In this document: one piece after another, positions 16,301 through 52,200 of the stretch
Layout: each line of letters opens with the position of its first letter
Numbering within the stretch: position 1 is the first letter of the stretch
The notes under the pieces: model-generated
The model's input: only the letters and a program-made list of their open reading frames with translations
What the model was told of the DNA's origin: nothing
Databases searched by the model: none
Translations under genes and position numbers: made by a program
DNA from: Mytilus trossulus
Lineage: Eukaryota
Assembly (NCBI RefSeq): GCF_036588685.1
Contig: NC_086373.1
Location: forward strand, 42,098,001 to 42,162,000
Length of the DNA stretch: 64,000 nucleotides
Direction of reading: 5' to 3'

Positions 16301-19300
16301 AAAGTAAGAACTTCCAACACATCACCATCACCAAAATACAATTTTGTCATGAATCCATTTGTGTCCTTTAATATGCACATAGACCAAGGTGAGCGACACA
16401 GGCTCTTTAGAGCCTCTAGTTATATTTGTTAATTGAGTGTCACTAATTCAGAGTCTTTTGTAGACAAAACGTACGTCTACCATGCAAAATTTTAATCATG
16501 GTATATATGCTGTGTATTTCCTGGAGCCGGCTTCACTGAAGAACTTAAGACTAAGATCGGTCGTAAGTATACTGACTTGTTCATTACTTAAAATCAATCT
16601 TAGTCGTAAGTGTTTTTGTGAAACCGACTCCTGGCCCTTCTAGATGTAAAGAAAAAAATACACCTTTAGACTAAATAAAAAAAACATAATTTTGGAATAA
16701 CTTATTTTAGCCTTTTGACTAGGGACTTTTTGAATATTCCTCGGAGTTCAGTTTTTTTTTTTGTGGTTTTATTTTTTATGATAGAAAAAGATTATGCATA
16801 ATTTTATTTTTGGTTTTAAGATCAAAATGGTTCTGAATCTTTCATATTACAACCATAACACTTAAAACTTTTTAACACAACATTTTAGGTAGCTCGATTT
16901 GTTTGGGATACACATGATAGAAATATTGCTTCCAATGGTGCTGTAATGAGGACCTCTATTGTTGGTATTCACATGTACTGGAGTTTAGATGATGTGACAA
17001 AAAATGCAAGGGATTTTGCAAAAACAACACATCACGATCCAAGGTTAATTAATTTATTTAGTATAGTTAAATGCACACTCAACATCAGTAAAAACACATA
17101 CGATATTTTTAAATTTATGCAAAGTATTCTCCCCCTTAAAAAACCAAAAACAAAACATCTTATATCTCCAGATAAATCTAGATCTTTTAAATTGTAGAAC
17201 TTTATATTTTGTGCAAAGGTGAGGCCAACAGGCTCGGGCTTTGAAGAATGTGTTCAAGGCTCCAGCTTATCAAAACTATTGGCCTCCACTTGCTGGTAAA
17301 CAAATCATCTGATGCTTAATTTCTAAGAAATTGATTGATTGCATGTGTTTAACACAATTTTCCCTAGTCGCCAAATCTTTTAAAACCGAAGTGACCAATC
17401 GACGTGCAGCAGAAAAAGTTACAATCGTAGTCAATTAAGATAAAGCCGAACACATGTACCACGTGTGGTGTTCGAAATCACAACCCTTAGTGTTGACAGG
17501 CTTGTGTTGTAGTTGTTTTACTACTTAGTCTATGGCCACCGAGACCTTTTTTCAAGGATTGGAAGATATCAGAAATGGGATACCTTCCCCTTGAATCCGA
17601 TACAACAGAATTGTTCGCTTCTCTTCTTTGACATTCGTTTCCTTATAATTCTCTTATTTTCTGATAATGTCTTTTATATCGTGTGTATCAGTGAGTAGGT
17701 TAATTATATACTATTTTTTTTACCTTTAAACCGATTGTGGAATCATATCAATCAAAGCATCTGTTATTCAAAATCATCATCATGGCATGTAAAATAGAGG
17801 TAACAGAAATATATAAACAAAAGTCTGGGTGAAATAATCGAAACGAGATTGTTCCTTTAATCAAACTGAAAAATCTCAAATGATTTCAGAAATGTTACAT
17901 AAAGATGTTTTGAAATATCCAATCGAAAGCAATTGAATACTTGGCTAAATTTCAAACAGAAATGATAAGGTATTGGAATAGAAAACATTTGACATGAAAT
18001 GCGATTCCTCCGTTACTGAATAATGATGACACTTAAAACGCAATTGACTATTGAGAGCAAAACTGACCTTGAAACTGACTTTTACTCATTATGTGTGATT
18101 ATCTACTAGGTGCCAGGCTTCAACAGTAGCTGTGTCTGTTGCTATAGCGACCATGTTACAAGGAAAGCACATGGACAAAAATGGCAATTTCATAGTCAAA
18201 GATATAATACAAGACGCCTACAAATATGCATCAACGTGTTTAGAAACGGACACAGAAAAGAGAGACCTTATGTTTTATTTGACATGTGAAAATATCGAAG
18301 ATTTGAAATTAGATGAAGCCAAAAAAATTGGCTACACATATAAATCCATGGGTACAGGATTTTGGTCATTAAAGCAAGATGATTTCCGGAAGACAATCAC
18401 AAATATTGTGATGCAGGTACAATTTTAATTATAGTTATTCTTGCAAATCCAGTGATCACTTTTGAAATTCTTACTTGTGACGCAAATTTTACCCTCATTT
18501 TCAATATCATCATTTCAGCATCAAGGGTTTAAAGAAAATATGGTGAATTGCGGCAATAATAGATAAAGGGCAAATAAAAACTTTAATTTAACATCAAATT
18601 AAAAAAAAATGAATTAATGCAATTTTTTTTAAAAAGATACCAAAGGGATAATTAAACTTATTAGTCGAAAACAAACTGACAATTACAAGGGAAAAAAAGA
18701 AATTTAAAACGAGCAAATAAAAATACTAGTGCACAAAACACAGCATAGAAAACTCAAGACTGCACAACACGAACCCCACTTACTATCACACTTTGGTTTG
18801 CATAGTGTGGTTCAGCACTTAAAATACCGGGGTTGTTCTTTATGCGTGCTTTACATGAAGCGCTATATTTGGTTTATCTCCTCTTATAGATTTAAAGAGG
18901 TTAATTGGATTTTATTAAAGAGGGCAAGGCAAGTGTCTCGAATTTTTTTATATGTTTTTTAAATTTTGTATTAGCTCATTCTGTCTTGTCGGTTTTCTCT
19001 GTATCCTATGTGCATATCTTTATTAATTATCTAAATTATTTTCTACTTAGGGAGGAGATGCCGATACAAACGCCTGTGTCGGAGGTGCTTTACTGGGATG
19101 TAAACTAGGTATGTCTGCTTTACCAAAGTCGTGGGTGACGAAACTTTTACATAAGGAGTGGTTGGATAATGAAATAAAAAAGTAAGTTAACTGTATATCG
19201 AATAGGTATAACATGTTATGAACAGTTGACGTACAGACAATTACCAAGCCTTGAAATTAAGAACGTCATTTGTGCGTTTTGTCAACTATTCAGTGCTGCG

Positions 19301-31200: not shown

Positions 31201-34200
31201 CGATTTGTTAAAGCAATTAAACTTTTAATAAGATGTAAGTATTAGTATACATGATTGGCGTAACGATAAATTTGAAATTAATCTTCCTGATCTGCAATAC
31301 TAGTAGTTGAAATCATTGGTAAACATGCATCTGAAAGAAAGTTTTACAACATTTCGATTCAGTATAATATATGTCAAACCTTATAAAGTGCTCATATCTT
31401 TGATTTTAAAAAAATATAATCAGTCAAAGTTGAGCTGCTGATATCTTTTAATAACAGTACATGCATATATATTGTACACATATCGCTTTTGTCTCGCCTA
31501 TGACGAATGTTTCAGAATGCTAACTGTGGAAATTTTAATCAGGCAACGACGGCAGTAGCTTTTTCCAGAGAGTTTTATGCTTTGTCTTTACACCTTAACA
31601 GCAGTTGCGAGAGTCCTCCTCCCAACTTTATCAAGAATGAATGAGTGGCTTTAAGCTAGCTGTCATGTAACTGCGAGTACTATCAGATCAGTACCTTGTG
31701 TTTTTTTGTCGTTGGGATGTACAAGTACTCGGCCACGTCCACTTGTATTTTTGTCAATCGGAGGAGTTAAGCCTTTTTAAACGGAGTTTTACGGTTCGCG
31801 CTTATGTTCATATGTTGTACTGTTATACCACTGTTCCGGCTTAAGGGAGGGTGGTATCCCGCTTACATGCCTAACTCTGCCACAGTATGTATGTATGTAT
31901 GTATGTATGTGCCTGTCTTATATAAGTCAGGAGCCTGTAATTCAGTGGTTGTTGTTTGTTAATGTATTGCATATTTGTTTTTGTTCATTTTTTGTACATG
32001 AATAAGGTCGTTATTTTCTCTTTTTAATTGATTTACATTGTCATTCTGGGGCTTTTATAGCTGACTATGCGATATGGGTTTTCGTCCCCATTCACAGGTT
32101 ATGCCTGCCTCATATTATTAATCTGTTTGGAAACTGATTTTGTTTCAGGACGGTATGATGCCGATGCATATTGTAGCATGCAGCGGACGTGAAGATGTGG
32201 AAGAAATAATAAGCTTCTTGTTACAAAGCGGAAGTGACGTTGATGGACAAACTAAATCAGACGAAGACACAATTCTTCACTTGATTCCAAGACATAATAT
32301 TATTCGGATAGCTTTCCCGACAATTCTTAAAATACTAGAATATAAACCGGATGTGTTCATTAGAAATAGGGTAAATATTATTCTTTTAAGTTTTATATAA
32401 TGTATATCCATATCTGTAATACTAAAATAACGAGGTCCAATTCGTCAGCCGTCATCACGTAAAAACGATGAATCAAAGAATTCAACTTTATATATAACTA
32501 ATATAGTACAATGCTGTTGATTAAAAATTACACCACTCCAGACCCTTTTGTTTTCAACATAATTGATATTGCCAATAATTAAGAAGTTCCGGGTCGAATC
32601 CGATACCGATACCAATAGTGGCATATTCACCTGTTACCTTTACCTTATCTGTACGTTCCGCATCTGACAGGCGCATCGCCAAACGCTGTATTTAGGATTT
32701 TGCTATATACACGGGATGTAATCACAGGGTTGACACTACTAAATTCAATCATTGTCATATTGTTCCCGATTGTAGTATTTTAATCAGTATTACTTTCTTA
32801 GATGACAATACGAATAATAAAAATCTATACTTAAACTAAGGCGTATAGGTACAGCATGTACAGTTTTCAATTTGTTAGCCGGAATGACGTAAAACAGCGA
32901 ATTAAAGAATTCAACTTTATTTATAAATCATAAAGGACTATTCTGGTTATAAAAAAAATACTCCTTTCCAGGCCCTTTTGTTTTCCAAATAAAATTGATA
33001 ATACCAATAATTGATAAGATCCAGGTCGACGGGTTCAAACAGAAAGATGCTGAAAGCAGAGAAAACTGTGCATCTTATAATCGGCATGAATTTATCAGAT
33101 GACAATACAAATACTAAAATAAGACTTACGCATAGTTATATTCTTTAATTCATTTACAGACCCGTGATATCACGGGTGTGTTCTAGTATTATGTACTTTT
33201 ATATCCATTAACTTTTTCTATTACTTCGTTATTTCTGTCTTCCCAAATTATGTACAAGTCATTTAACTAGCTGCGAAATTACGCAAATTTAAAAAACAGA
33301 CGATTTCATGAAACTTCCCTTGTATTGATAGTAAAAATGATATCAACACAACGATTTTTTATATCCCCATTGATTCGCGCGTTTTTCATAAGATTGTACT
33401 TCATGCTTCAATGTACCATAACCTCAGCTAAGTTAGAATAGTTAAATTTTATATTTCAGCATTTACGTTCACCTTATGACGAGGCAATAGCTCTAGGATA
33501 CTATGAGTTAGCTAATGTTTTAGATGGTAGTAGAAGTGCGCAAGATGCTAGAAAATATTACGAGCAAGGCATTGGCGCTATGTATGGTGTAAGTGAACCT
33601 ACTATATCTTTTGAATTCTCCATTAAGTCATTTCATTTATATAATCAAAAAAAAAGATAGGATAACAATGAGTAATAATCATATAGCCTGGTATCGGTAT
33701 CTTTGAGGAGGTTTTTATTTTATTTCAATACGCCATGGAACTGGTTTATGCATGCAGAGGAACACATACATTGACATACTGTTCAAATAGTTATCAAAGG
33801 TATATACCAAGATTATAATATAGTACGCCAGACGCGGGTTTCGTCTACAAAAAACTCATCAGTGACGCTCAAATCAAAAATATTTATAAACCCAAAAAAG
33901 TACAAAGTTAAGAGCATTGACTACAAAAGGATGCATAATCTTTGTGGTTGCCATGGTACATGACAATGACATCTGATACTTAAAATATTAGACTTAGATT
34001 ATATTATATCAAATAATTCAATCAGAAATGTTATTTTTTAAACAAAAATACCGAACTTCAATGTAATTTCTAAAAGGGGAAGTCCATAGAAGGTTAGACT
34101 ATATATCACCCAAATGGACAGATAGAAAATAACTGGCACGTTCCTGACTTGGAACTGGCATTTTTCGAAGAAAATGGTTGGTTGTTATAAATAAGAAGAA

Positions 34201-37200
34201 TGTGGTATGAATGCCAGCGAGACAACTATTCATCCAGGTCACAATTTATAAAAACTAAAAGGTTCACAATTATAGGTCAAAGTACGGCCTCTAATACGGA
34301 GCCTTTACTTCCACCGAACAAACCTGGTTTTGTAGATACCATATCCATGATATAAGTAAATTTGTAGATGTTGTTTAAGTTTGCCTTATTTTACCTTTAG
34401 GCAAAACTAGTGGAGGCTGTTATGAATAGTAAAGAAGATGTTGCAAAAGATTGCATAAAGAATGGTGCTAATGTTAATTATGTAAATGAGGTCAGTAGTA
34501 GCTGCAGTGCAAAAGGAGTTTAATTATTCATAAAATTTTCTTTAAAATTAAACGTCATTGCTCAGTTGAAAACTTAATAAAAATATAACAAACTTGAAAT
34601 GTTAAACCTAGGTATAGTTTCCTTGTTATTTGTTGCGAATTTTTAATGGTTGCCTTGGTTTTATTTTTTCGTTTCAATATCTAAAATTGAGAAAGGAAAT
34701 GGTGAATATGTCAAAGCGACAACCACCCGACCATAGACCAAACAACAGCCGAAGGCAACCAATGGGTCTTCAATGTAGCGAGAATTCCCGCACCTGTAGG
34801 TGTCCTTCAGCTGGCCCCTAAAATATGCATAATAGTACAGTGATAATGGACGTCATACTAAACTCCGAATTATACACAAGAAACTAAAATTTAAAATCAT
34901 ACAAGACTAACAAAGGCCAGAGGCTCCTGACTTGGGACAGGCGCAAAATTGCGGCGGGGTTAAACATGTTTATGAGATCTCAACCCTCCCCCTATACCTC
35001 TAGCCAATGTAGAAAAGTAAAAGAATAACAATACGCACATTAAAATTCAGTTCAAGAGAAGTCCCAGTCCGATGTCAAAAGATGTAACAAAAGAAAATTA
35101 AAAAAAATGACAATAATACATAAATAACAACAGACTACTAGCAGTTAACTGACATGCCAGCTCCAGACCTCAATTTAACTGATTGCAAGATTATGTCTTC
35201 ATCATATGAATCTAAGTTATTTTGCTGTGTATTGAACACAATTATTTTCCAAGTCTTTAAGTAAATTTATTATATTTTATTATTTCGTTGCATACGTTTT
35301 CATATAAAGTGTATTTAACATTTCTATTATTCATATTTTATAGCATGGGGCTGGTGCAATACATTACCTGTTTACGCATTATGAGCTTCCACCAGAAAAT
35401 ATTCTTCCATTATTGTTCACATCAAAAGCTGATCCAAATCTCAGAGATTATGTAAGTCTAGAAAGTTTAGATGAGTTTGAATAGTATCAATTGCCTCCTA
35501 CCCTTCTTAACTGTCTAATATGGGATTCAAATGTAATCTGCCTTGAATAGTAACAAATAAGATAATAAAACTTTTAAGATGCAATGGGTATTTTATCTTT
35601 ATTTGCTAATGATATATCAAATATGTGTGTCTATGATACGATCACAAATACTTACCAATCGGCTTCAACTCAAATAGTATGTGTCCATTTGACCCGTTAC
35701 ATATATGTTATTTTTTTAATAAACAATGTACTTTGTTTATGACTTGAAATGTTTTAAAATAGAACATCTACATAATATAAGTTCCAATTAAAAATATAAT
35801 CTCGAAAACTAATTCCAGTGGAACAAAAATTAGTTGTAGTATAAGTTTCTTTATACAGAATAAAGGGTATAGAATACATAACATACACAACAGGAACACA
35901 TATTATGGTTATACATGTATATATAACAAAGCTTCGCGGGGAACGTCTATTTGGCGGATCAAAAATACATACACGTTGACAGAAGCACATTTCATTGAAT
36001 TGGTATCGCAGGGTTGTTTCTTCAAGGAAAGACATATCGTTCGGAAAGAAAAAATATATGATTATAATATACGTCTTTCATTTTCTATGTTGTCTTTTGT
36101 GTACTTCATGTATTGTTTGTCTGTTTGTCATTTTCTTTATTAGTCATTGCTTCGTCCACTTATTTTCGACTTATGAGTTTGAATGTCCCTCTGGTATCTT
36201 TCGCCTCGCTTTAGTTAATATTATTGCAAGCATGGAAAATGTCATGATTAATTATTTCATGATAGAATGTATATAAAGATGCAAAATATTCAACAGCTGT
36301 GAACATAAAATATTTTTGCGTTTTACAGGAAGGTGATAACTGTTTAAATTTGGCAATAAAAAGTCAACGTCTTAGAGAAAGTGGAAACATGTACAAAATT
36401 GTAAACCAACTATTAGAAAAAGGTGCTCTCTCTACAGTCAAGGATTTGGTACGTACATCCTTTAAAGGAATATAATAATAAAAAAGAGAAATATAGATGA
36501 CCAGAAAGGTTTCTTAGATTTTAAAGAAGAAAAAACCCTTATGACATCAATTCCATACAAATGTATAATAATAAACATAATGGCTTATCAAGGTAATAAT
36601 TTTACGGGAATAATAGACAAAACTCCATTTTAAACTCGAATATTTTATAGTTCGACTTAGTAACCAACAGAATATTTGCTAAAATTCCTGTTTGAAAACA
36701 TGAAGCAAAGATTCAGTACTATGTCTTGGTCAAAATCTAAGATCATTAAAAAATGCATGCATTTTGAAGATTCATTTTAAGGAATTAAAATAATTACCAA
36801 GAGTGAATAAAGATAACACTTTATAAATTATGTACGCTTTTCTCGATTTGTCTTCATTCGCCCAAATCGACAACAAAGATCGATCAAAAAGTTAGAAACT
36901 TCAGCAGATATATGCCTCAAACGTCCAAACTCAATTTTAGTGATACCTGCATGTGGTAGTTTTATCAACATATAATACAATCAAGTCATGAACCAAAACA
37001 ATCACTACGTCTATTCCTGACCATGCTTTTGCCAAACATTGGTGTAAATGAATTTGACCTTCGTACATTTGCTTCAAAGAACATGTTTTATTCGCGTCCA
37101 TGAAACGACACCACAAAAATGCAAATAAACAAAAAATACATTTTGTCAGTTTTCCTCTCCTTTTAATTACAGGACGGACATGATGCTTTTGCTATAGCAA

Positions 37201-40200
37201 CATTGAGAGATTACAAAGACATAGTTAAACTGATTCGAAAGTTCAGAGCTGGTCATCTATCGGTAAGTTTGGTGAAGATTCATATCAAATATATTTTTTG
37301 AAAGAACAGTTTGATATAAAGACAGGTATTCTAATTTTGATCTACAGCTAGTATTTGATGCAAGTTCCTAGTTCAATTTTTGTATTCTTTAGTATACCAT
37401 TATTTATCTGTCTGCTCCTTGTTCTTCCATTTATATTCGTTTAAACATTATCAAGCCTACAGCTACAATGTAATTTGCCCTACAATTTTGTTAATGGCAC
37501 ACAAGTGAAGAATTATGCGATATCCTCGTTCAGGCCAGAATATGAAAGTATTTATAAATGTTTTCTTTTTTAAATTGAAAATGTTTTTTCTTCCCTACTA
37601 AAACATTCTCCCAATCTAAAGAGTGTCCAATTGCTATGTTTTCTTTGACATAGAAAGCAAATCTAAAGTATATCTCTCATGGTCAATTCTTGTACTCGAA
37701 AGCAAAACCGTTAAAGCACGATTAACTATAATGATATCAACTGTTAACCTATTGTCAATTTTTATCAAAATACAATTTAAAGTACTAGTGTTTTATTTAT
37801 TTTATCGTATTATTATTCCATTTTGTACATTTTCAATTTTGAAATAGGATGAAACGGTAAGATAGTTTGTTATATTTCAACACCTTTATCTGCAGACTCT
37901 ATGTAAACAGTCATCCTGTGAGTGATTGATCTTACTGTATTTTATTTTCAGACGTATATTTTCACTTTTCAATACAATTCTACCCTGGAGTACCCTAAAT
38001 GAATAGCTGTCTTTCAGCTTATCATTTCAGCTAATACTGTGAATAACAATGTCATTGTAGGATGTGCGAAGAAAACCCACAAAAAAGACACTTTATATGC
38101 AATAACTTTCTTACACATGTACAAATTTCCTAGTATTATAAGTGAAAAAATCCTAATAAACTAGAATACTTATAGGACGACGACGAACCTTCTATTATTA
38201 CACCAACGGTAAGACATCGCACATGCATGATATAGAAACACACGTACAAGTTTCCTTTTACGTAATATATTTTATATTTTTAATTCAGCATGTACTGGTT
38301 TATTGGTTATATTATCAAAGATGTTGCATGGATGTATCATTCTGTACTTCAATCCTCCTGAAGCATTTTCGCTTGGTTTACATACACTTCCGCATGCAGC
38401 AGTTATATATATTTTACCTCATGCCAGCACTGTTTTCTTTGCTGATTAAATCTCAAATTATCCAAAATCTATGCACAATTGTTCTATATCAAGTGCTTAT
38501 TTTACTTTTTAATTGGAAACAGGCTTTTTTGCTTCTTTGTCAAATATTTTCTAGATTTGTTTTTTTTTGCAGCATAGATCGTGGCATGTTTCAAATTATA
38601 TTTTTTACTTATATATTTTTTTAAGAAACTTTATTTCAGCAGAGTCATATATTTCGACTTCATCAGTTTTTTGTTATTCTGTTTATGTCCCTTAGTTTTA
38701 AATGTTTAAGACGTTATACATACCAGTATATGGCTTCCTCTTTATACTTTACATAATAAACATTATTAAAGAAACTTATCGTGCTTACATAAATTGAAGT
38801 CATGTTGTTGTAAAACTGAATTACCTTAGAGTGATTAAGATGTTCTCTCCAGGTTCCCATGTGTCATAAAGCTCCTCACGTTTTAAAATGTTTTTTTTAT
38901 GGGTTGAGCGTTCCTGCTAAAGATAGACACAGAAAAGCGCTACAGACACATCAAAATTATTTTTATTTTCTAACGCTGGGTCAAAACCCATGATGGTAGA
39001 CTAGTATTATAAGTATACCTCGAAGGTATCATAATCACATCAAATTATTAAAGTATTGTTTTATTTTGAATTATTTAAATGACTTCAAATGCATTTGACA
39101 AGTCATATATATTTGCATGTTGTGGGTTCTTTTATGTTCTCAGATTCGAATTCTATTGTTTAATATTTTATCTGAAAATGGAATTTAAGACAAAAAAGGT
39201 TTATATCTTATTTCTCGAAATTATATATATATTCTGCAGTATCATTGAATGTGTTTCGTTTTGGCGTATCTTCTCTGAACCTGATATGATATTTACTGTT
39301 GATTAAGCTAGGCTTAGTCCTGCTATCAAGCAGATCAATATATTGTTTTTCCTTGTTTAGTTATAATCTTGCAAAATTGTAGACGAAAAAGAACGCTCAT
39401 AATACACCGGTAAGAATGGATGTTCACTAAAATTCACGTTTTTTATTTCTTTGTTTTAAAATTTCACTTTAACATAAAATTAATCAATTTTAAAAGGGGT
39501 TTTTGTTAAAGAGTTCTTTTGGTTTTTATTTCGGATGAACACTTTAAATTTTATTTTTTTATAATTCATTTTTTGCTTCATCAGAATGTGAATTATAAAT
39601 TTATGATAATGCTTTTTTTGTTAAAGTGAAAGATGATAAATCGACGAATCTTATTGTATTGACCTTATACCTTCAACCCAACTGTTCGCAACGGTAGGTG
39701 ATGCATGCACTGTAGGAGTCGCTAACAATGCCGACACACCCAGTATAAGTTCTTTTGGAACTCATGATACTCCTTTAGTTTTGTTGGTTACCATGAATTG
39801 TGTCCTATTTTGATTTTTGTTATCTATCATCAATTCCCTATTCCTTTGCACATTAAATTTAAATAATATTAGATTTGTTCTGCTTATTCAACCCATAATT
39901 GAGGTCATGTAAGCCGCAATTTCTGCGACGATGATATTTGTTCAACAAAAACAACAAAACGTAATTAAGGTTGACTTATTATATAATTTTGTAGGAGAAA
40001 AAGGAACAATTCGTGCCAGCGGTTAGACAAACATAGTCGTAATTGTTTTGTCCACTAACACGCATGTGAAATATTGACTAAAAAACCCATTAGTATATTT
40101 GTTATGTTAAAATAATTTTAATGTAATTTATGAACGATAAGCGAATAGACTACTTTCGAGTTCATCCGTCACCGGAAAAAAATTGTCAATTATACGCGCC

Positions 40201-43200
40201 TTTATCATCGTCATTTGTGCGTTTAGGGGCGTCGTCACTTCCTTCCAATGTTGAGCGAGTGGTTGGAAAACTATAATTCTATATTGTACGAATAATTCGG
40301 CAAATTGAATTCTCAAAATTGACAATCAACACTGCTGTCATTAGGGAAATGTCAGTAAGTACCTACAGAGCAACCATTATTTCTAGTTTATCCTGCACAA
40401 AGACGATCACTAAGACGCTTGATGAACGTAAATAGTGCAGGGATACAGGCGAGCCCCTCTATCTGGTAAATGACGTCATAAAGGCGTGTATAATTGACGA
40501 GTTTTTGCCGGTGACGGATGAACTCGAAAGTGGTATATTAAAACTGAATATGATGCCTGAGGCATCGTAAACGTATTAGATTGAATAATTGGCAACAATA
40601 ATTTGCTTATTTAATACTGCAGTGCTTACTTTAACGTCTTGGAATTGTGATATTATAAATTGCTTTTTAACTTATTGGCTTTTTTATTTACTTAAATATG
40701 ATATAGTTCATAGGTGATTTTAAAGTTTCGTTTACTAAATAAATAGTTATTTTATATGCAAATTAATTTGTTTTAAGAAAAACTTACTAAGCATATTTGT
40801 GTTGTTGAAAATAAAATAAAATGATGTTGTAGAAAGTAAAGAATCACGATACACCACGGAAAGCTTCAGTGGTAAGACAAATAATACACCCACTCGCACC
40901 CATCACATTACGAATTCAGTGTTTGATTACAACTTAAATGTTTGTTTTAATTTCTATTTGTTCCTTTAAACATGTTAAATGCACTTATTTTTAAAATCAT
41001 TTGTGCCAATAAAAACCCGTAAGAATAATGTTTTTTTTATAAAATGCGAAAATAGAGTAAGTGTCAACGAAAAGGTTACCCATCAACACACTTTCACTAC
41101 ATTATTTCGCACTTGACCAGTCGTTTTTTTGTGTTATTACATGTCATAATTCGAAGTTCATTTTTAAAGGGATTTTGAGTGAATCTAACAGAAGGCAAAG
41201 ATTAAGTCACGTCAAAAATTAGAAACCACAAAGAGAGAGTTAAAAATAACTTCAAGTTAATTTGGACAGGCAAATTGACCTAGAGGCGAGTGGCTATTTG
41301 TTTTTGAAAACTTATCCCTTAACCTATTTATTTGGAATACGAATGCACACTGAAAACATTAAAACAAACAGGAGCAATAACATTTAAAAGACAAAACTCT
41401 GTTAGTTCAATTAAACTGATCGGAGAATAAATAAACACAATAAAGTAAAAAAAAAAACAAAAAAAAAACACATGTGTATTGAAAATAACAAACGATCTTT
41501 TTTTAACAGGTGATAGTGTTTTTTTTTTATTTCTATTGATATATAATATGCACTACAGGGTAACCTAAAACACACAAAAAGAGTGTCTAATTGATGTATA
41601 CACTACATTATCTTTGGTCTTTTTTGATAACATACGTCTTGACTTGTATCGTTTGAAATTCTGCAATTAATTATATTATTACTAGTATTTGATGTCATAA
41701 TATATTTTGTCACTTGATTATCCAAAATATTTTGACAATTATATGAATAAGATTGTGGTCCTTTTTACAAAAAATATGAAGCTGTAATTAAAAAAAACAA
41801 ACATTTATCGGAATATTTGAAGTAAAAAAAAACTGTATTTAGCAACATTATAAACCTGTACCAAATCAGGGAAATGACCATTGTTATATCATCGTTCGTT
41901 TTTGTGTGTGTAACATTTTAACGTTGTGTTTCTGTTGTGTCGTAGTTTTCCTCTTATATTTGATTCGTTCCCTCCGTTTTAGTTTGTAACTCGGATTTGG
42001 GTTTTTTTTCTCAATCGATTTATGAATTTCGAATAGCGGTATACTTCTGATGTCTTTATTCATAAAACATACACCTGCTAAATAAACATATATGTATGTA
42101 AACTTTTAGAATAAACCAGAGACAAATACCCCACACAAGACCTTGGTATGAATTTTGAGAGTTAACATTCACTCCTCTGTTTGAGAAATCACCATAATCT
42201 ACGTTTGGTACTATTTTTATCGCACATCATAATCTACGTTTGATACTATTTTTATCAAACATGAAGTATTTGTACACTATGAGTTTAACCCTCATACATC
42301 TTCGTCTTCCTTAGTTGTATTAAAATATTTATGTTAAATAGACCACATAATGTCTTGAATAATAGTAAAGCAAGTAATTTAGGAAAGTTGTTGATATCGA
42401 CATGAATTACAGTGTCGTGTTGTGGCCTTTTATTGCCGACTATACGGTACGGGTTTCCTCATTTATGAAGGCCAATTGAGTGCCTTTAGTTTATTGCATT
42501 AATTTCATTTGAATTTTAGTGGATAGTCGTCCATTTTCAGTAATAGCACATCGCATTTTTGTTATAACCTAGATTAAATAATTCCATTGTATCTTATGAT
42601 CTCTTGTATTTTACCATATATGTTTTACTCATTTACAACGTATATAGTTTGTTCTGGCTATTTTATTTTCCAGTCGATACTGTGTTATTCCCTTCACTGA
42701 AATTATATTTAGATTTTGCCCCACGGAAATCTGGTACTAGATTTAATTTCAAATATACAATCAGATTCAAACATTGTTGTATTTATATGGTCGAGATCAT
42801 TCTGTTGCATTTTTATAAATCGCAACAATAGTTAAAGCATTTTTTTGTCAACAGATGGCACTGCCAAGAGAATAATTAGGCGTTACGCCGCACTTCTATT
42901 AAAAATTGGAACATCAAATAAATGATATATATACTAATATTTTAAAACAACTTAAGCTTATGATTTAGCTTGTTTTCAATAGAATTTGTTTTGTTTAATT
43001 TTGTATATTTTTTTTATTGAACGGATTGTTTGAGTTTTCTGTTATTTTAATTTTCATTGATTGTCTTCTTCGAGTAGTTAATTAAGTCAGTTTTAATGTT
43101 TTCCTGTTGTTTTGCTCATATGAGTATGTTTAGTTTAAAATAAAACTATATTTTAGGAAGCACTCAAGCGTGCAGTTCGTGTAAGTTGGGTTTGTTTTGC

Positions 43201-46200
43201 ATGTCATTGTATTGGTAACTGATGTTTGCCGTATTTATGCATTACTGATAACTACGTATGCGCTCATAGATTTTGTGACTCTTGAAAATGTTGCTTTAAC
43301 CATTTCATGCAACAGCGTAATCGACATTTTTGTCAACTAAAAGTATTGACAACCGTAGTTTTTACTTCTGTTTCAGCAAGAGAGAAACACATGATGAAAT
43401 GAAATAAAAAAAACTTTGATTTGGTCTAATGAATCATATGAGTCTTTATCGAGAAAAAACAATATGACTGTTAATCGTCGATTAAAAGAGGTTTTTTTAT
43501 ATAAAATTCAAATAAGTAATGGCTGTTCTTCAGTTAATTTTATCGTGTGGTTTTTTTATTTTGTTTTTTATCTAATTATTTTATTTATCAGATTTCACCT
43601 TTACTTTTTTGTTTATCATAACATAAGTGGAATGAAAGTATATTTGTTTGTTATGATTTCTTGATATTGTTTTCAGAGTGATCAATATTGTTTGTGTGTA
43701 CTAATGCGTAAAAGACAAAAACAATTTGGATATACGAACTGAAATGTACCAATGCTCTGATTTATTTTTACAATAATTGAAGTTAAATTTAGTAAGGTAC
43801 GAGAAAAGAAATACATAAATACAATCTACAACTTTCATTATTATTTAGGACGAACCTCCTGCGCCAGTTGTAGACCCTGTAAAAGAGGTAAAATGAAACT
43901 CATCCTTCTTGTAACGGTCTCCTATTATCTCACATATCTTGCTTTTAGCACAATAATATATCCAATCATATCCTTTTTCCGTATTATATCAACAACGATT
44001 TTATTTTAGTTCTGCAGATGGTGTTTCTCGGTAGCATTTTTTACTCACTAGGAAAGTTTTCTGTGCACAATATTCTATAATTTCACTTAACTTTATATTA
44101 CTTGATCCGCAATAAATGATATAAAATAAAATGGCATTAAAACCCTATGATAACATAGCAGTATTATAATTCAGGAACAAGTGCACTAAAAAAATCAAGA
44201 ATGTTTTTACTACCACTGACCGCTACTGGTTGACAATAGTTATTCGTTCATTGCTGTAAATTTAGTATTGACCTCATTCAAATGATACGTTTTGTCTACA
44301 AATTTCCGGTTTATAACACTTTTGACTTTCATTAACTAGATTTTGTTGTGATTTTAAGCCTGTTAGCTTTTTGTAATGTTCAACATTTGATATATTATTT
44401 TTTCCAAACTTTTGAACTTGAGCGTACCTGGTGAATTCTATTTTAGAAACAAATTTGATCTTTACTGAAATAATGACATGTGTGTTTGAGAGTACAGCTG
44501 TAATTTATAGGTCTATTAAGTATCTTTCAAAATTAAAACAAATGTTTAATATCACGATGGATTTGAATTAAAGTCGTGTTTATAGCGGATGAGAATGTTA
44601 TACCATTGAAGCATCGACTTAACAATACCCAATCGGTTAATAATTATATTTACTGTTATACTGTTTAGTGCTTTTGCATACATTCTTTCAAATGCATAGT
44701 TACAATTTCTATAATATTATACAATTAACTTATTTTTTCCTCATGTATATCATAGAAAACTCAATTGATGCACCAGGTAAGGACTTTTCAGTCTACTTAA
44801 TACATGTTGTTCGATGTTGTTCACAATTTACTTATTCTTAAATCAAATCGATATACCCGTTACACAGATATGTTGTCTTAATTTTTTTAAGTTTTCGAGT
44901 GAACTAACTGTGGCAAAATGATTAAACGTTTGCATAACGAAAGTGATGACATGTTTTGCTTTTCTTTTAAAAAGCAACCTTGTCAAAATGCATATTTAAC
45001 ATAACTCTTGAACTTGGGTTTGCAGTAATCGTTACACAGACTAATCTAAACTAACGTATTTTCTTTCATGTCATCATATAGCACAAATCTAATTAAGATT
45101 AGTTCTACGCACTTGCTCCTCGTTGTTTGAATGTCGCGCTCCCATGCGCGACATATAAACAACGAGGACCAAGGACAGAGAACTAATTATAATTAGGTTG
45201 CATATAGCACCCAAATGTCACGATAACAAAAAATATATTACGTATTTGCCACTTTGCTTGTGATGAAAATTAGAGCTGTAGCAAATGAAATAGTCATAAG
45301 TTTCGTAATATTTTACCGATTTTTTCAAACTAATTTCGGAAGATTGATTTGTTCATTGAAATTGAAGGAAAATGTTATAACGTTCATTACAGCTATAAAT
45401 TCTTTTAAATTTTAAATTCTATAAGCAATTATATAGATTTCTATTTTTTATAAACTTCTTTCTAGTATATGTAATATTTTTTTTCAGCTATAACATAGAT
45501 TAATTGACAAATAAAACAGTGGTAACATGCGTATTGTAAATGAAATAAAATCACCATACCATCATACAAATTTTATCCTTGTGACTAATATTATATACTT
45601 TTATTGTATTGATTCACTATCGGAATACCAAGGTTACTGACGATCATACTTTTATTTTCGGTGTAACTGTTTATTTGTTTGTCGTTCGTTGCTAAAATTT
45701 GTATAAGGTTTTATTTATGAAAAATGAATGGCTGATATTATTATCTTATGAATTGAAATCTGATGGTATGTTGATCGAAATCTTCGCATATCATTTTGTT
45801 AAGTTAGGTTTTGGTTTGATTTTAATGCACATCAACATGTATTATGAGCCACTGTTAACTGTACGTATCTAACTGCCGAGTTTTGACTAATTTGGTATTG
45901 CTTAATCTTAGTATTCAATAATCTGTTTTGGTAAACCACTGTTTTGTTTTTGTTTCCTACTGTTGTTATGTACAATCATTTGATATATTACTAGATCGTT
46001 AGCGGTGCTCTGTGGTTTTTAGTAGAGTTTTTTTTTTATTTTGTGTTTTGATCACCATTGTTTGTCTTTCAACCTTTAATCATTTTTCCAGTTTTGCTAT
46101 TGCGTTAAATTTGTCTTTTTATTTTTGACATATAATTTTGAATGTCTCTTTAGTATCTTTCGCCTCCTTTTATAGTATTTTGCAAAACATAAGTAAAAAA

Positions 46201-49200
46201 GTGACAGAAACTACTCTGTATAAAAGTATATTTTAAAAATAAATTATCTTACCAGTGAATATAGATTTTCTCCATTGGTTCTAACGGTACAATTTAATAG
46301 GTTTAATGCGGGTTATAAATAAACTCATCATAGATACCAGGGCTAAATTTTGGATAAACGATTGACATGAAAATAAACTCATCATAGATATCAGGACTAA
46401 ATTTAGTATATACGCCAGACGCGCGTTTCGTCTACAAAAGACTCATCAGTGACGCTCGAATCCAAAACAGTTAAAAAGGCCAAATAAAGTACGAAGTTGA
46501 AGAAAAGTTTACTTAATTTTTGTTTTCTTTTGAAATAATAGCCAATTAAAAAACAGCCTACGGTTACTACTTTGAAAGAAGATGAAGACGATGAAGATGA
46601 TGAAGAAGATGATATATTGGATGATCCTGATTTGGATGTGAATAAGCCAAACGAGGTAAAGATATATTTTGTTAAAAACCATTCTATTGCAATTAAGATT
46701 AAGCAGCTACATAGTTTCTCGAAAAGGAGACATATTTGTTATATTGTCATTGTGTTATATGTAATAAGAAACGCATGGTCGATGCTGGTGCTATTGAACT
46801 GTTAGCATCCGGGAGTATCATTACTCAAGTAGTCAATGGATGCCCGCTGGTATGGATAAAAAGCTAACTGCACAAGTGTTCAGTTGATAAAAACTACCAT
46901 TCCAATTCTCGTAGGGAAAGTTGACCCGAGATGGTTTGGGCTATTTGTTGGATCTCTTGGCTCTCATTTCTTTTTATTAAAACCGTTGCTGACGAAAATC
47001 AATCTTAAAAAAGATATCGGTATAAGAAAAGTATAAAAACTATTCCCCATTGCATGTTTGAGTTTTATGTTAATGCATGCATTTCCTTTTTTTCTTCATA
47101 AAGTGTCTTTGTTTTAACAGTGATATATATGTGTTTTTGTTCTGTCTGCTTTAGCTTGGATTGTATCCATTACACCAGGCAATACTACGCACAGATCCAG
47201 CAACAAGAAATAGACTCGTTTCTAACATTTTGGACCGCGGAGCTGACGTCAGTGCAAGAGCTCTAGATGTAAGCATGCAACTCATTATGTTTAGTAAATT
47301 AAGTGTAAAAAGAAAGTACATTTGTATGTTATTTTCAAAAAAAATTGCGTTCTTTCGGTATTTTTTTGGGAATCACTTTTTTTCAACTTGCCACCATATA
47401 GAGCTTGTCAAAGTATATATACATTTGTTTTCTTATGAGAAATTAAGTATAAAAACATACAGTCGTTTTGGTTTGTTTTTGTTTTTGTCACTGTATTTAT
47501 GTGATATGATATCCTTCATCCAAACAGATTAATCAGCAATTATACTGGAAATGTAGTCTATACACATTAATTGTATTTGTCTTAATATTGACATATCAAT
47601 ATTGAAGTATGTAGACTAATATACTGTAATGGAAATTCAAAAAAAGAGAGAAAAGATTTTTTTTTATTTATATCACTTGTTGAAAAATTAAAACTTTTAG
47701 ATTTGATTCACTAGGTTCAAATTCGGACAGATTAAAGAGGTAATAAGTATCCATTTCCTATTTCCGTCAGGACAAAATCATTCCTTATTTTAAACATCAT
47801 CCATAAGATTGTAAATTTTATTAAAATGTGTATTTGACTCAAATAATGGTGAAGCTGGTTGTTTTGTTATAAAAACTTATATTTTCCTTATTTGTATTTA
47901 TAATTACAATAATTACATGCATTATATAGAGTGAGGAACATGATGAGGTGAGAATATACATATGACCTTGGTGTTGGTCTTATTATTATTGCTATTAATG
48001 TCTAGCTTAGATTTTCGTAATTAGACTGCTGTATAAATTCTTATGCTTGTAGTATATTCTGTATACATTTATCTTTAAGCATGTTCATGTTTTGCATAAA
48101 CTATCTTTTACAACTTAGACGCAGTCGCTTTTCCATTCCAAGGCTTGATCGATATTGTAAAAAGTATTTTTTATTTAGTTACTTGCGTTTTCACTTTTAT
48201 AGAATACTTTATGCTCTTCAACTTTGTACTCGGTTGGCTTTATAACTATTTTGATCTGAGCGTCACTGATGAGTGTTTATGTAGACGCGTCTAGCGAATA
48301 ATTAATAATCATGGTACCTTTGATGACTATTTTCACCACTAGGTCGATCCCGCTGCTGGTGCACGTTTCGTCCTTGAGGGAACACCAGCCCAGTATTCAG
48401 CACTTCAATGTTGACATGAATATCAATTATATGGTCATTTATATAAATTTCCTGTTACAAAACTTTGAATTTTACGAAAAACTAAGGATTTTCTTATCCC
48501 AGCAATATATTACCGAATTTGGCATAACTTTTTGGAATTTTGGGTCCTCAATGCTCTGCAACTTTGTACTTGTTTGGCTTATAATATTTTGATTTGAGCG
48601 TCACTGATTAGTCTCATGTAGACGAAACGCGCGTCTGGTGTATCAAATTATAATTTTGGTACATTTGATAACTAATTAGATCGTGCAGTGAATATATAAA
48701 TACACAGCCGCACCCGGCCTTATTTACATGTTTAGTGTTTCAAGGATTGTTGGTACTTTTCTTGTTCGGATCTAAAATTAAAATAACGTCACATAATTTG
48801 TTGAATATACACTTTAAAGGAGGAACCAACCTCAACGTTTTGTTGAACGCTTTAAAAAAAATATATTACTCAGAAAGTTTTAGATTCTGAGAAGGAGGTT
48901 AACTTAAAGATAAATGTGTGATTAATGACAACGAAGTAACAGTTAATGTAATATAACTGGGTTGATACGGGCTGATAATCTCAGAGGATATCATAAGCTC
49001 AGTATTCACGGCTACATGGGTTATAATAAACTTGTCATTTTTTCTGAAATGATAGATTAAAAAACAATATTTCAGAAACTAAGGTTTCAACTCTCTAAGC
49101 TGATTTGACTATTCTGTTTTGATAATGTTTTATATAGCTTTTCGTGTGTTAAGTGTTAATACATACATCATTGATTTTCAATTATTTTGGTTAGAGCACT

Positions 49201-52200
49201 CCTAGTAAAAAAGAGAAACAGAACTGCTTCGTAGCACGAATATAATTTTATAAGTGAACAGTTTTGCGCGGCGTAATAGTTCTTTAAGCTTCTTGTCTTT
49301 ATTTGGACCTGAGATCACCCCCAGTGTTTAGTTTCATGTTGCTCATTCATTAGTTTTCTATGTAGTGTTTTGTGTACTTTAGTTTCAATCTAATTAAAAT
49401 ATTGATCTCTGATTACACCGTGTAGAACGCCACATGCGGGGTGTCGGCTATGTATGACATGGGGTGGCAATTTTGAAGCGACGAAAAAGTAACAAGGTAA
49501 GTTTAAGCATAAAAAATTCTTATTTTAAGAACTCTCAGTACCATATAATGTTTTGCACGGAAGGAACAGCAACATAATCTATTTCCTGAAAGCAGAAGCA
49601 GTCGTTTACAGTGCTTAGTTTTCTCAAACACCTCGCCCTAGTTTTCCGTGTTGCAGATTTTGAGGCTTTATATGCAAATTTCTGTATAAAAAACTACTTT
49701 ATACAACTACCCTCCGTATGATTTATATAGAATTGTATTCCTCTCATGGACTTCTACCAAATATCAGTTTCTTAGTTAAAATTAATTGGTTTTAAAACTA
49801 TTATTCATCAAAATTTAAAGTGTCGCTCGGGGTGTCAGATTTTGCATCTCTGGGGGTAGAGGCTTGTCATAAAAATAGAATACATTTTCTTATAAATCAG
49901 TCTCTATCTGATATTTTTTTAATCAAACACACCCACACTGTTATGATGACAAATTACAAACTTAAGGTGTGTCATTTGGTCCATATTTAAAGTCTTTTAA
50001 GTAGAAGTCTGACTAAAACACGTCCTCATCTAAAATTAAAAATTCTCATATGCCACTTAAGTCATGTTTGTGTGAAAAGGCTACATCGTTTGGGATTACT
50101 TATATATTTCGCGTCAATAGTCACTGTATAGCATTACTAATATTTGTGGTCTTTTTTTTGTAAATGCGAATCAACAATTTCATCATTTTATCATAAACCT
50201 TTTTCATAGGATGCTAGAATAAACTATTTCAACACCCAGGAAAAAGTTAGAGAAAATAAACCTTTCATGCTGCATTTTTGTTATACTTTTATCCCATTTC
50301 TGAAATATATACATGACATAGTATTTACCCATCTTTATTTCAGACGTTTTAAAGAAAACCTGATGTATGCTAAAACCCCACTCTATGTGTATACAAGAAT
50401 TTGTCAGGCCTGTTTGTCAGCATACAGACCTGGTGTATTATAAACTCTCACTCTTTGCATATACCAGTACTTGTCAGGTATGTGTGCTAGCATACCGGCC
50501 TGGTGTATGCCATACTCTCATTTTATGCATTTACTAGTATTTGTCAGGTCTGTATGCTAGAATACCGACCTGGTGTATGCTAAACTTGCCCTCTATGCAT
50601 ATACTAGTATTTGTTAGGTCTGTATGCCAGCATACCGACCTGGTGTATGCTAAACTCTCACTCTAGGCATATACTAGTATTTGTCAGGTCAAGAAGGGCG
50701 AAATATACCAGAGGAACAGTCGAACTCATAAATCGTTAATAAACTGACAACACCATGGCATGAAAAAGACAAGCAGACAAATTTCATCTGTGGAACGTTT
50801 ATTCCATAACGGTCAACAAACTCGTGATGGCGCCCTTAAAATTTACACAGGATGATTTCAACTTCACCATTTGAAAATCTTGGTTATAAATTGATGGAGA
50901 AAAAATAAACTGTTTTAAAATCTGATATAGCTGGCATTATGCATACTAAATAGATAGTGAAACCGCATTTTTTAAAGTTGTTGTGTTTGCATTCTGCCTG
51001 TCAACATATTGTATGCCAAAGTTATTGTTTGTTTTTTGTTAAATGCTTTTAGGGGGATGTCTGTATTACCAAACATGCATACATGTATTTTAATTATCGG
51101 TAATTTAAACAATTTGAAATGATCTGTCTTCACTGCATATCATAAGTCGATATCAAACTGAACTAGCTTAGATATGAAAATAAGTTAATTTATAGCATTA
51201 TACTATAGTAACAATTGTGTATAATGGCATATACACTGGAGTTGTAAAAAACAGATCCTTCATTCAGGAGAGCCAAAGAATTGATGCCTTTTCTATTTGT
51301 CGCCCTTTTTAGTGAAGCCTGGATGATGATGTATACATTATTAGCCGGAACAGCAAAAAATCTGGTGTTGTTCATTGGTGTAATAGTTTTCTAGGAGGGC
51401 ATTAGTTTAACCTAGCCAGTCACTGAGACGTGTCACAAGTAAATTAATAAGCAACACATAAATAGTAACACGAAATGTATAGCCAATGTTTGAAAAATGT
51501 TAAAACGAGAAATGGAAACTACATATCATACATATATATGTGTGAGTGAATATTATACACTTCACAATTCATTAACATTGAAGTGGCGTAGTCAACTACC
51601 TCAAAGACCTATAAACGCGAAATATATTAGTCATCCCAAACGATGAAGCCTTTTCACACACACATGAGTTAAGTGGCATATGAGAATTTTTAATTTTAGA
51701 TAAGAACGTGTTTTAGCCAGACTTCTACTTAAAAGACTACAATATGGACCAAATGACACACCTTAAGTTTGTAATTTGTCATCATAACAGTGTGGATGTG
51801 TTTGATTAAAAAAGGATCAGATAGAGACTGATTTTTAAGAAAATGTATTCTATTTTTATGACAAGCCTCTACCCCTTGAGATGCAAAATCTGACACCCCG
51901 AGCGACACTTTATATTTTGATGAATAATTGTTTTAAAACCAATTAATTTTAACTAAGAAACTGATATTTGGTAGAAGTCCATGAGAAGAATACAATTCTA
52001 TATAAATAATACAGATGTTAGTTGTATAAAGTAGTTTTTTATACAGATATTTGCATATAAAGCCTCAAAATCAGCAACACGGAAAACAAGGGCGAGGTGT
52101 TTGAGAAAACTGAGCACTGTAAACGACTGCTTCTGCTTTCAGGAAATAGATTATGGTGCGGTTCCTTCCGTGCAAAACATTATATGGTACTTAGAGTTCT

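What the first reader, a model, noticed from the sequence alone, without database searches (positions are those of the whole stretch)
37848..44776. Eight frame-symmetric microexons build a combinatorial linker between two ankyrin blocks
Seen: a ~9 kb interval that the ORF track leaves empty hides eight 9-39 nt exons. All are 3n, phase 0 and stop-free, mostly with GTAAG donors, and together they give a 73-aa Pro/charge-rich linker leading into a D/E tract. Inference: any subset can be skipped in frame, giving a ceiling of 2^8 = 256 linkers, or 768 isoforms with the 3 tails, tuning spacing and charge between the ankyrin modules. This resembles microexon programmes and schistosome micro-exon genes, but in an intracellular prenylated protein. 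Automated annotation would probably miss them.
Basis: partly seen in the sequence, partly recalled or inferred. Interest (0 to 1): 0.8.

Follow-up and report, generated by a model that had tools for sequence, protein, structure and literature searches.

The report
Mussel ankyrin gene's alternative microexon linker
A mussel ankyrin-repeat gene really does build the floppy linker between its two folded halves from nine tiny in-frame exons that are mixed and matched by splicing; public annotation already lists dozens of the resulting isoforms, so it is a good new example of a known trick, not a new kind of thing.

Summary
The 9,279-nt intron 37263-46541 of a Mytilus trossulus ankyrin/CaaX gene (the window encodes RefSeq LOC134724754 isoform X1 exactly) contains nine phase-0 microexons of 9-39 nt, not eight.

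- **The 9-nt exon:** 37848-37856 (DET) is in no annotated protein I retrieved. A spliced transcript contig from a close relative carries exactly those nine letters between the flanking exons.
- **Combinatorial use:** retrieved RefSeq models show 12 distinct linkers in M. trossulus, 34 in M. californianus and 25 in M. galloprovincialis. That is 50 patterns overall, 20 of them shared between species. Transcript contigs show both inclusion and skipping of exon 40833-40871.
- **Not free choice:** use is not a free 2^n (E4 is always with E7; E6 is never with E4 or E5).
- **Structure:** AlphaFold2 puts the cassettes in a disordered stretch between two confident ankyrin blocks.
- **Other bivalves:** oysters and a scallop have alternative Pro-rich or acidic cassettes at the same position.

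"Annotation would miss them" is wrong for eight of the nine exons. The schistosome MEG and neuronal eMIC comparisons are only superficial; troponin T mini-exons are the closest analogue. An earlier finding of this scan had already noted this gene's three CaaX tails.

The parts
37173..37262 (+). Constitutive upstream exon (90 nt, DGHDAF...RAGHLS), the last exon of ankyrin block 1
   Evidence: Exact match to P0261 with AG/GT boundaries. An RNA contig is laid on 37172-37263 with 1 mismatch (record 17).
37848..37856 (+). E0: 9-nt cassette microexon (DET), absent from every annotated protein I retrieved
   Evidence: An X1 contig joins 37263 to 39994 with 'ATGAAAC' between. Together with the two ambiguous G's, this reads GATGAAACG between exon 37262 and E3 (tables 5 and 5c). 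The 9-mer is unique in the window. No retrieved protein contains HLSDET.
38176..38208 (+). E1: 33-nt cassette (DDDEPSIITPT), acidic and hypervariable between species
   Evidence: Present in M. trossulus RefSeq isoforms. A 33-nt variant (DDEEPTMATTT, 7 of 33 nt different) sits between 37262 and E3 in an X1 contig. Six different peptides were seen in six sources.
39383..39409 (+). E2: 27-nt cassette (TKKNAHNTP), basic, with one T-P site
   Evidence: Intact AG/GTAAGA boundaries. Orthologous cassettes TKKNSHTTP (M. californianus) and TNKKSHTTP (M. galloprovincialis) are annotated. It is in none of the 14 M. trossulus isoforms retrieved.
39995..40021 (+). E3: 27-nt cassette (EKKEQFVPA), the most often included, with a GTTAGA donor
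   Evidence: RefSeq isoforms. Contig joints 40021>40833 and 40021>42110.
40833..40871 (+). E4: 39-nt cassette (KVKNHDTPRKASV), basic, with a TPRK motif
   Evidence: RefSeq isoforms. Contigs of run X2 show both inclusion (40021>40833, 40871>42110) and skipping (40021>42110).
42110..42145 (+).
   Evidence: RefSeq isoforms of M. trossulus and M. galloprovincialis. Contig joints into 42110.
43157..43180 (+). E6: 24-nt cassette (EALKRAVR), invariant across species, never annotated together with E4 or E5
   Evidence: RefSeq isoforms in four species. Co-occurrence tables. Only its first 13 nt were in the stretch laid with reads.
43849..43887 (+). E7: 39-nt cassette (DEPPAPVVDPVKE), acidic and Pro-rich
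   Evidence: RefSeq and other annotations in five species. Not covered by the read-laying run.
44756..44776 (+). E8: 21-nt cassette (KTQLMHQ)
   Evidence: RefSeq isoforms. Not covered by the read-laying run.
46542..46655 (+). Constitutive downstream exon (114 nt, PIKKQPTVTTLKEDEDDEDDEEDD...NKPNE): the end of the disordered linker, the D/E tract and the entry into ankyrin block 2
   Evidence: Exact match to P0261. Net charge -13. pLDDT rises from residue 381.
47930..47947 (+).
   Evidence: Exact match to P0261. Skipped in P0156 and P0206.

Best explanation
**Shown**
- The 9.3-kb intron of the single-copy M. trossulus gene LOC134724754 holds a tandem array of nine phase-0 cassette microexons. 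The protein has an N-terminal ankyrin block, a linker, an acidic tract, a second ankyrin block, and a polybasic tail ending in CaaX.
- The exons are real, spliced at AG/GT, and included in many different subsets.
- The region they encode is predicted to be disordered and lies exactly between the two folded blocks.
- Cassette lengths are the same in all five Mytilus species compared, while their sequences diverge about 6-10 times faster than the rest of the protein.
- The cassettes differ in charge: E0, E1 and E7 are acidic, E2, E4, E5, E6 and E8 are basic, and E3 is neutral. Four carry one S/T-P site each, and two of these (TPRK and TPHK) fit S/T-P-x-K/R.

**Inferred**
- Because every coding intron of the gene is phase 0, any subset keeps the frame. 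Splice-site choice therefore sets linker length (0-85 residues on top of about 24 constant disordered ones), net charge (about -9 to +9) and the number of proline-directed phosphorylation sites.
- This would tune how the membrane-anchored C-terminal module and the N-terminal ankyrin solenoid are spaced, or how they interact with the adjacent acidic tract.
- The choice is partly coordinated rather than free.
For: - **Gene identity and structure:** the window encodes P0261 (XP_063444049.1) exon by exon, and all 19 coding exons are multiples of three. The gene is single-copy in the assembly.
- **Isoform series:**. Linker dissection gives 34, 25 and 12 distinct linkers in three RefSeq annotations. 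There are 50 patterns overall, 20 seen in at least two species, and the all-skipped form appears in three species.
- **Independent spliced contigs:** E0 inclusion, E1 inclusion, and E4 both included and skipped at similar contig depths of 16.8, 13 and 10.3.
- **Structure:** two confident blocks with pLDDT below 50 over residues 297-380.
- **Divergence:** linker identity is 76-79% against 96-98% for the rest of the protein (Fisher p from 3.5e-4 to 3.6e-8).
- **Charges and S/T-P counts:**
- **Other bivalves:** oysters and Argopecten have alternative cassettes (S/T-P- and Pro-rich in oysters, partly acidic in the scallop) at the homologous position, including an all-skipped form.
- **Domains:** only ankyrin repeats in Pfam.
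Against: - No quantitative or tissue-resolved RNA data were available. Gnomon isoform models may combine junctions that never co-occur on one molecule.
- The only runs available are small, of uncertain record, and from a relative rather than provably M. trossulus. They were laid on 37170-43169 only, so E6 (all but its first 13 nt), E7 and E8 lack independent read support.
- E2 is not annotated in M. trossulus and E5 is not annotated in M. californianus.
- The functional reading (spacer, charge, phospho-tuning) has no experimental support. Fast sequence divergence is also what a weakly constrained, partly noisy region would show.
Confidence: 0.85

Rival explanations
1. Splicing noise. The microexons are real but poorly defined, so stochastic skipping yields many low-abundance in-frame products. 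Only one or two forms matter (for example E1+E3+E7), and the rest have no function.
For: - The commonest pattern, -1-3---7-, is the only one found in all five species, and it is the pattern the M. coruscus annotation and both non-RefSeq sets (M. galloprovincialis VDI, M. edulis) also report, with or without E1.
- Thirty of the 50 patterns are seen in one species only.
- The polypyrimidine tracts are weak and AT-rich.
- The linker diverges quickly.
Against: - All cassettes keep frame, length and splice sites across the species where they are annotated.
- Twenty patterns recur between species.
- E4-included and E4-skipped contigs have similar depth in one run.
- The same alternative-cassette design is found in oysters and a scallop despite complete sequence turnover.
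- Non-random associations between cassettes.
Confidence: 0.2
2. A regulated, tissue-specific microexon programme of the neuronal Srrm/eMIC type (or an Rbfox-driven one) switches the cassettes as a block in particular cell types.
For: - The microexon size class fits.
- GCATG, the Rbfox core motif, is enriched downstream of E1, E3 and E6: 5 of the intron's 9 copies lie within the 150 nt downstream of microexons, against about 1.3 expected.
- eMIC programmes exist across bilaterians (PMC8797185).
Against: - Only 1 of the 9 exons has UGC within 20 nt upstream of the 3' splice site, and there are no UCUC-type tracts (against the signature described in PMC8797185).
- Cassettes are used in many independent subsets rather than as one block.
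- Three of the five GCATG copies cluster after one exon.
- No tissue data were available.
Confidence: 0.1
3. Chance AG...GT matches in an AT-rich intron: the exons are not real and 37262 splices directly to 46542.
For: - The intron holds 171 AG|3n stop-free|GT candidates.
- An all-skipped isoform does exist (P0196, 463 aa).
Against: - Exact peptide matches to RefSeq isoforms.
- Spliced contigs with GT..AG joints at the predicted boundaries.
- Exon GC content of 0.38-0.54 against 0.30 for the intron.
Confidence: 0.01

Closest known systems
Fast skeletal troponin T (TNNT3) 5' mini-exons 4-8 (Breitbart et al. 1985, Cell 41:67, cited in PMC2447309)
   Same: - A tandem run of very small cassette exons used combinatorially.
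- They encode a charged, hypervariable, unstructured segment next to a conserved folded part.
- The alternative exons diverge unusually fast between species (title of the 1986 J Mol Biol paper cited in PMC2447309; here).
   Different: - Nine cassettes here rather than five.
- The segment is an internal linker between two ankyrin blocks of a CaaX protein, not an N-terminal extension of a sarcomeric protein.
- There is no sequence relationship.
- From my own knowledge, untested here: the TnT mini-exons are not all phase 0.
Schistosoma micro-exon genes (MEGs) (bioRxiv 10.1101/2023.06.21.545858)
   Same: Short symmetric exons (3-81 bp) separated by long introns, with protein variation generated by skipping.
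   Different: - MEGs are secreted proteins with a signal peptide, made almost wholly of microexons, and specific to Schistosomatidae.
- Here only 255 nt of about 1.6 kb of CDS is microexon-encoded.
- The protein has no N-terminal hydrophobic signal, is ankyrin-rich and ends in CaaX.
Neuronal Srrm3/4 (eMIC)-dependent microexon programme (PMC8797185)
   Same: In-frame exons of 39 nt or less that modify surface or disordered parts of proteins.
   Different: - The UGC motif near the 3' splice site is present in 1 of 9 exons.
- No long UCUC polypyrimidine tracts.
- Many tandem cassettes in one gene rather than single microexons in many genes.
- Tissue specificity is unknown.
NCAM muscle-specific domain microexons and CD44 variable exons (from my own knowledge, not checked in papers here)
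   Same: Several adjacent in-frame cassette exons are inserted in a hinge or stalk between folded domains, and are combined in many ways.
   Different: Those are extracellular stalks of adhesion receptors. Here the protein is an intracellular lipid-anchored ankyrin protein, and the cassettes are smaller and more numerous.

Membership tests
Combinatorial cassette microexon array (troponin T / NCAM type) | Exons of microexon size (about 51 nt or less) lying in tandem within one gene | tested here: met
   Nine exons of 9-39 nt within intron 37263-46541.
Combinatorial cassette microexon array (troponin T / NCAM type) | Each exon can be skipped without changing the frame | tested here: met
   All are multiples of three and phase 0, as are all 19 coding exons of isoform X1.
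Combinatorial cassette microexon array (troponin T / NCAM type) | Exons are actually spliced into RNA | tested here: met
   Spliced contigs support E0, E1 (variant), E3, E4 and E5. RefSeq models support E1-E8. E6-E8 have no independent read check here.
Combinatorial cassette microexon array (troponin T / NCAM type) | Many different subsets are produced from one gene | tested here: met
   12 (M. trossulus), 34 (M. californianus) and 25 (M. galloprovincialis) distinct linkers. E4 is both included and skipped in one run. Whether the combinations exist on single molecules was not shown.
Schistosome micro-exon genes (MEG) | Symmetric microexons separated by long introns | tested here: met
   The introns between cassettes are 0.3-1.8 kb.
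Schistosome micro-exon genes (MEG) | Secreted product with an N-terminal signal peptide | tested here: not met
   By reading the sequence, the N-terminus MPAYMGDDGISPEQRK... is hydrophilic and leads into ankyrin repeats, and the C-terminus is CaaX (CVIS). No signal-peptide predictor was run.
Schistosome micro-exon genes (MEG) | Most of the coding sequence is made of microexons, and the family is restricted to Schistosomatidae | tested here: not met
   255 nt (273 with SEEHDE) of about 1.6 kb of CDS. The family is found across Bivalvia.
eMIC/Srrm-dependent neuronal microexons | UGC motif close to the 3' splice site, with long UC-rich tracts (PMC8797185) | tested here: not met
   Within the 20 nt upstream, only E2 has TGC. 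The tracts are A/T-rich.
eMIC/Srrm-dependent neuronal microexons | Neural-specific inclusion | not testable with these tools
   No tissue-labelled RNA runs were offered.
Ankyrin-repeat protein with a CaaX prenylation signal | Ankyrin repeats above Pfam thresholds and a C-terminal Cys-a-a-X | tested here: met
   Ank_2 scores 76.8 bits against a cutoff of 27.3, plus other Ank models. Isoform tails end in CVIS or CSVL. Prenylation itself was not tested.

The most novel reading that the evidence does not exclude
The cassette array is a splice-encoded 'charge and phosphosite code' for a membrane tether. Acidic, basic and T-P-x-K cassettes would be chosen in coordinated sets (E4 with E7; E6 excluding E4 and E5) to set reach, electrostatic interaction with the neighbouring acidic tract or polybasic-CaaX tail, and kinase control. 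This design, rather than the sequence, would have been conserved at the same linker position across pteriomorph bivalves (mussels, oysters, scallops). The 9-nt exon E0 would be a functional exon that annotation pipelines do not yet list.
Probability: 0.25. Interest if true: 0.6.

Novelty: new member of a known kind. Interest (0 to 1): 0.4.

Why it matters
This is one of the larger tandem arrays of combinatorially used microexons in a single gene: nine in the linker and a tenth nearby, giving at least 34 annotated linkers in one species. It lies in a disordered tether of a lipid-anchored ankyrin protein found across bivalves.

It offers a compact natural system for three questions:
- whether the length, charge and phosphosite content of a disordered linker are under splicing control;
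- how exons as short as 9 nt are recognised;
- how far annotation pipelines miss the shortest exons.

It changes no principle. The isoforms are mostly already in RefSeq, and the mechanism class has been known since troponin T.

Tried and rejected
- **RNA run search:** I gave look-up of sequencing runs the whole 9.6-kb stretch.
- **Read laying:** limited to 6,000 letters and one call. I chose 37170-43169 in order to test E0, so E6 (all but 13 nt), E7 and E8 have no read-level check.
- **The look-up of encoding contigs:** DNA-level conservation of E0, E2, E5 and their splice sites in other Mytilus species could not be tested.
- **Tandem duplication of the cassettes:** local alignments of exon plus or minus 60 nt gave no convincing similarity (best z = 3.6 for E4/E6, the rest 2.2 or less). 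Common origin of the T-P cassettes is therefore not shown.
- **Named orthologue or solved structure:** only generic ankyrin or DARPin hits. RefSeq names such as 'notch-like', 'ankyrin-1' and 'tankyrase' are inconsistent similarity labels.
- **P0260:** this 53-aa metagenome protein in one cluster is unrelated to the gene.
- **Literature:** no paper in the held library mentions these loci or mussel microexons.
- **Joined model:** The only window sequence searched as protein was the single exon 32149-32370. All full-length work used database proteins returned by the tools.


Full report
**What the locus is**

The window is AT-rich (about 31% GC) and carries a multi-exon gene on the + strand. I searched one exon only (32149-32370, 74 aa). 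It hit a 505-aa Mytilus californianus protein at 97% identity. A word search with that database protein returned RefSeq isoform series:
- M. californianus LOC127720098, up to isoform X37;
- M. galloprovincialis LOC143078216, up to X41;
- M. trossulus LOC134724754, up to X16;
- M. edulis, M. coruscus, oysters and a scallop.

Mapping M. trossulus isoform X1 (P0261, XP_063444049.1) back onto the window reproduces it exactly, in 19 coding exons from 28280 to 54537. Every exon has AG/GT boundaries and a length that is a multiple of three. The window is therefore M. trossulus. The gene is single-copy in the assembly, and every coding intron is phase 0.

Pfam finds only ankyrin repeats, and PDB sequence matches are generic ankyrin or DARPin chains. 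I never joined the window's exons for a search. All full-length analyses used proteins returned by the tools.

**Checking the observation**

The intron 37263-46541 (9,279 nt) contains nine AG|exon|GT, phase-0, stop-free microexons.

| Exon | Coordinates | Peptide |
|---|---|---|
| E0 | 37848-37856 | DET |
| E1 | 38176-38208 | DDDEPSIITPT |
| E2 | 39383-39409 | TKKNAHNTP |
| E3 | 39995-40021 | EKKEQFVPA |
| E4 | 40833-40871 | KVKNHDTPRKASV |
| E5 | 42110-42145 | NKPETNTPHKTL |
| E6 | 43157-43180 | EALKRAVR |
| E7 | 43849-43887 | DEPPAPVVDPVKE |
| E8 | 44756-44776 | KTQLMHQ |

The pattern alone would not be convincing, because the intron holds 171 such candidates of 9-45 nt. Two other lines of evidence settle it:
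- E1 and E3-E8 are letter-for-letter identical to cassettes in M. trossulus RefSeq isoforms.
- E2 has annotated orthologues in M. californianus (TKKNSHTTP) and M. galloprovincialis (TNKKSHTTP).

Exon GC content (0.38-0.54) exceeds intron GC content (0.30).

**Independent RNA evidence**

The run search returned only three small runs of uncertain record from one study. I laid them on 37170-43169. They behave as RNA:
- Depth is zero over most intron bins.
- Contigs cover the exon 37172-37263 with one mismatch.
- Three of the five reported joints skip introns at GT..AG at the predicted exon boundaries: 40021>40833 (E3-E4), 40021>42110 (E3-E5, skipping E4) and 40871>42110 (E4-E5). These are in run X2 at contig depths 16.8, 10.3 and 13.

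Two X1 contigs join 37263 to 39994 with extra letters in between.
- In one, the letters are 'ATGAAAC'. Together with the ambiguous G on each side, this gives GATGAAACG, exactly E0.
- In the other there are 31 letters which, with the flanking G's, give a 33-nt variant of E1 (DDEEPTMATTT, 7 of 33 nt different from the window).

GATGAAACG occurs only once in the 64-kb window, at E0. No retrieved protein contains HLS-DET.

One caveat applies. The runs come from a close relative or a divergent allele, not demonstrably from M. trossulus.

**Combinatorial use**

I parsed the linker of 93 Mytilus proteins.

| Annotation | Distinct linkers |
|---|---|
| M. californianus RefSeq | 34 |
| M. galloprovincialis RefSeq | 25 (one further pattern in an older annotation) |
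| M. trossulus RefSeq (14 of 16 isoforms retrieved) | 12 |

- There are 50 distinct patterns overall. Twenty are seen in at least two species and seven in at least three.
- The all-skipped form (463 aa, HLS|PIKKQ) is annotated in three species.
- The commonest pattern, found in all five species, is E1+E3+E7.
- Use is not free. E4 always comes with E7 (Fisher p = 7e-4), E4 and E5 are associated (p = 0.002), E6 is never seen with E4 or E5, and E6 always accompanies E3.

Gnomon models may also combine junctions that do not co-occur on one molecule.

A tenth phase-0 cassette microexon (SEEHDE, 47930-47947) sits in ankyrin block 2 and is skipped in two isoforms.

**What the cassettes encode**

AlphaFold2, run on a 13-sequence alignment of orthologues with isoform X1 first, gives two confident blocks (residues 8-296 and 381-507, pLDDT about 90). 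pLDDT is below 50 over residues 297-380. That stretch is the cassette-encoded segment plus the start of the acidic exon.

Cassette net charges run from -4 (E1) to +3 (E4). The next exon has net charge -13. E1, E2, E4 and E5 each carry one S/T-P site. TPRK and TPHK fit the proline-directed S/T-P-x-K/R consensus; that consensus is from my own knowledge and was not tested here.

Between species, cassette lengths are the same in every pairing compared, but linker identity is only 76-79% against 96-98% for the rest of the protein (p from 3.5e-4 to 3.6e-8). E1 has six different peptides in six sources.

Oysters (Magallana, Crassostrea, Ostrea) and Argopecten have alternative cassettes at the same position: Pro- and S/T-P-rich in oysters, partly acidic in the scallop. 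An all-skipped form is annotated there too, although nothing aligns with the mussel cassettes. Relatives also exist in Dreissena, Potamilus and Solemya, but no alternative linker is annotated in Dreissena.

**Mechanism**

Shown: a tandem array of in-frame cassette microexons is alternatively spliced to give a disordered linker of variable length and composition between two ankyrin blocks.

Inferred: this tunes spacing, net charge and phosphosite number of the tether between a membrane-anchored C-terminal module and the N-terminal ankyrin solenoid.

Possible regulators are only hinted at. Five of the intron's nine GCATG motifs lie within 150 nt downstream of E1, E3 and E6. The eMIC signature (UGC near the 3' splice site; PMC8797185) is present at only one of the nine exons.

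The main rival explanation is splicing noise around one dominant form. Recurrence of patterns across species, the similar depths of the E4-in and E4-out contigs, and the parallel design in other bivalves all argue against it, but only quantitative long-read data can settle it.

**Comparison with known systems and novelty**

The closest analogue is the combinatorial mini-exon block of fast troponin T (PMC2447309 and the papers cited there), including the fast divergence of the alternative exons. Schistosome MEGs (bioRxiv 10.1101/2023.06.21.545858) share only exon symmetry; secretion and the 'mostly microexons' architecture are not met.

No paper in the held library mentions these loci. Public annotation, however, already lists the isoforms, as an earlier follow-up of this scan on the same gene's three CaaX tails had noted.

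Verdict:
- This is a new member of a known kind, of moderate interest.

- The run search and the read-laying run were each limited to one use.

Noticed in passing
window 47930-47947 (+): An 18-nt phase-0 microexon (SEEHDE) inside the second ankyrin block. It is also a cassette, skipped in M. californianus X4 (P0156) and M. trossulus X7 (P0206). The homologous spot in the oyster has alternative peptides (NEDHDE vs PQATGKSILK).
   Followed up: partly
window 28280-54537 (+): All 19 coding exons of isoform X1 are multiples of three, so every coding intron is phase 0. In principle any internal exon of this gene could be skipped in frame, not only the microexons.
   Followed up: partly
window 40144-40539: A MITE-like element immediately downstream of E3: 62-nt terminal inverted repeats (90% complementary) with 272 nt between them. 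It is massively represented in the RNA-derived contigs (summed depth 400-4,500), presumably from many genomic copies.
   Followed up: partly
window 38225, 38288, 38326, 40062, 43199: GCATG (the Rbfox core motif) clusters downstream of E1, E3 and E6. Five of the intron's nine copies lie within the 150 nt downstream of microexons, against about 1.3 expected.
   Followed up: partly
window 38176-38208 and orthologues: E1 is hypervariable, with six different 11-aa peptides in six sources: DDDEPSIITPT, DDEEPTMVTPK, DDEEPFNISPK, DDEEPFIITPT, DDEEPTMVAPK and DDEEPTMATTT. Two of these differ between two M. galloprovincialis annotations.
   Followed up: partly
window 7413-7574 and 19051-19182 (+): Two near-identical open segments (GGDAD(S/T)NACVGGALLGCKLGMSALP...) lie about 11.6 kb apart, upstream of the ankyrin gene. 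By recall, untested, they look like exons of tandemly duplicated ADP-ribosylglycohydrolase-type genes.
   Followed up: no
window 33820-33885 and 46400-46470: The same short interspersed repeat (...cgccagacgcg.gtttcgtctacaaaa.actcatcagtgacgct...) occurs in two introns of the gene.
   Followed up: no
window 49820-49990 (+) and 51729-51908 (-): Near-identical ORF translations on opposite strands (MSLGVSDFAS.GVEACHKNRIHF...) indicate an inverted repeat pair about 1.9 kb apart in the large intron before exon 53455. There are also tandem repeats around 50360-50740.
   Followed up: no
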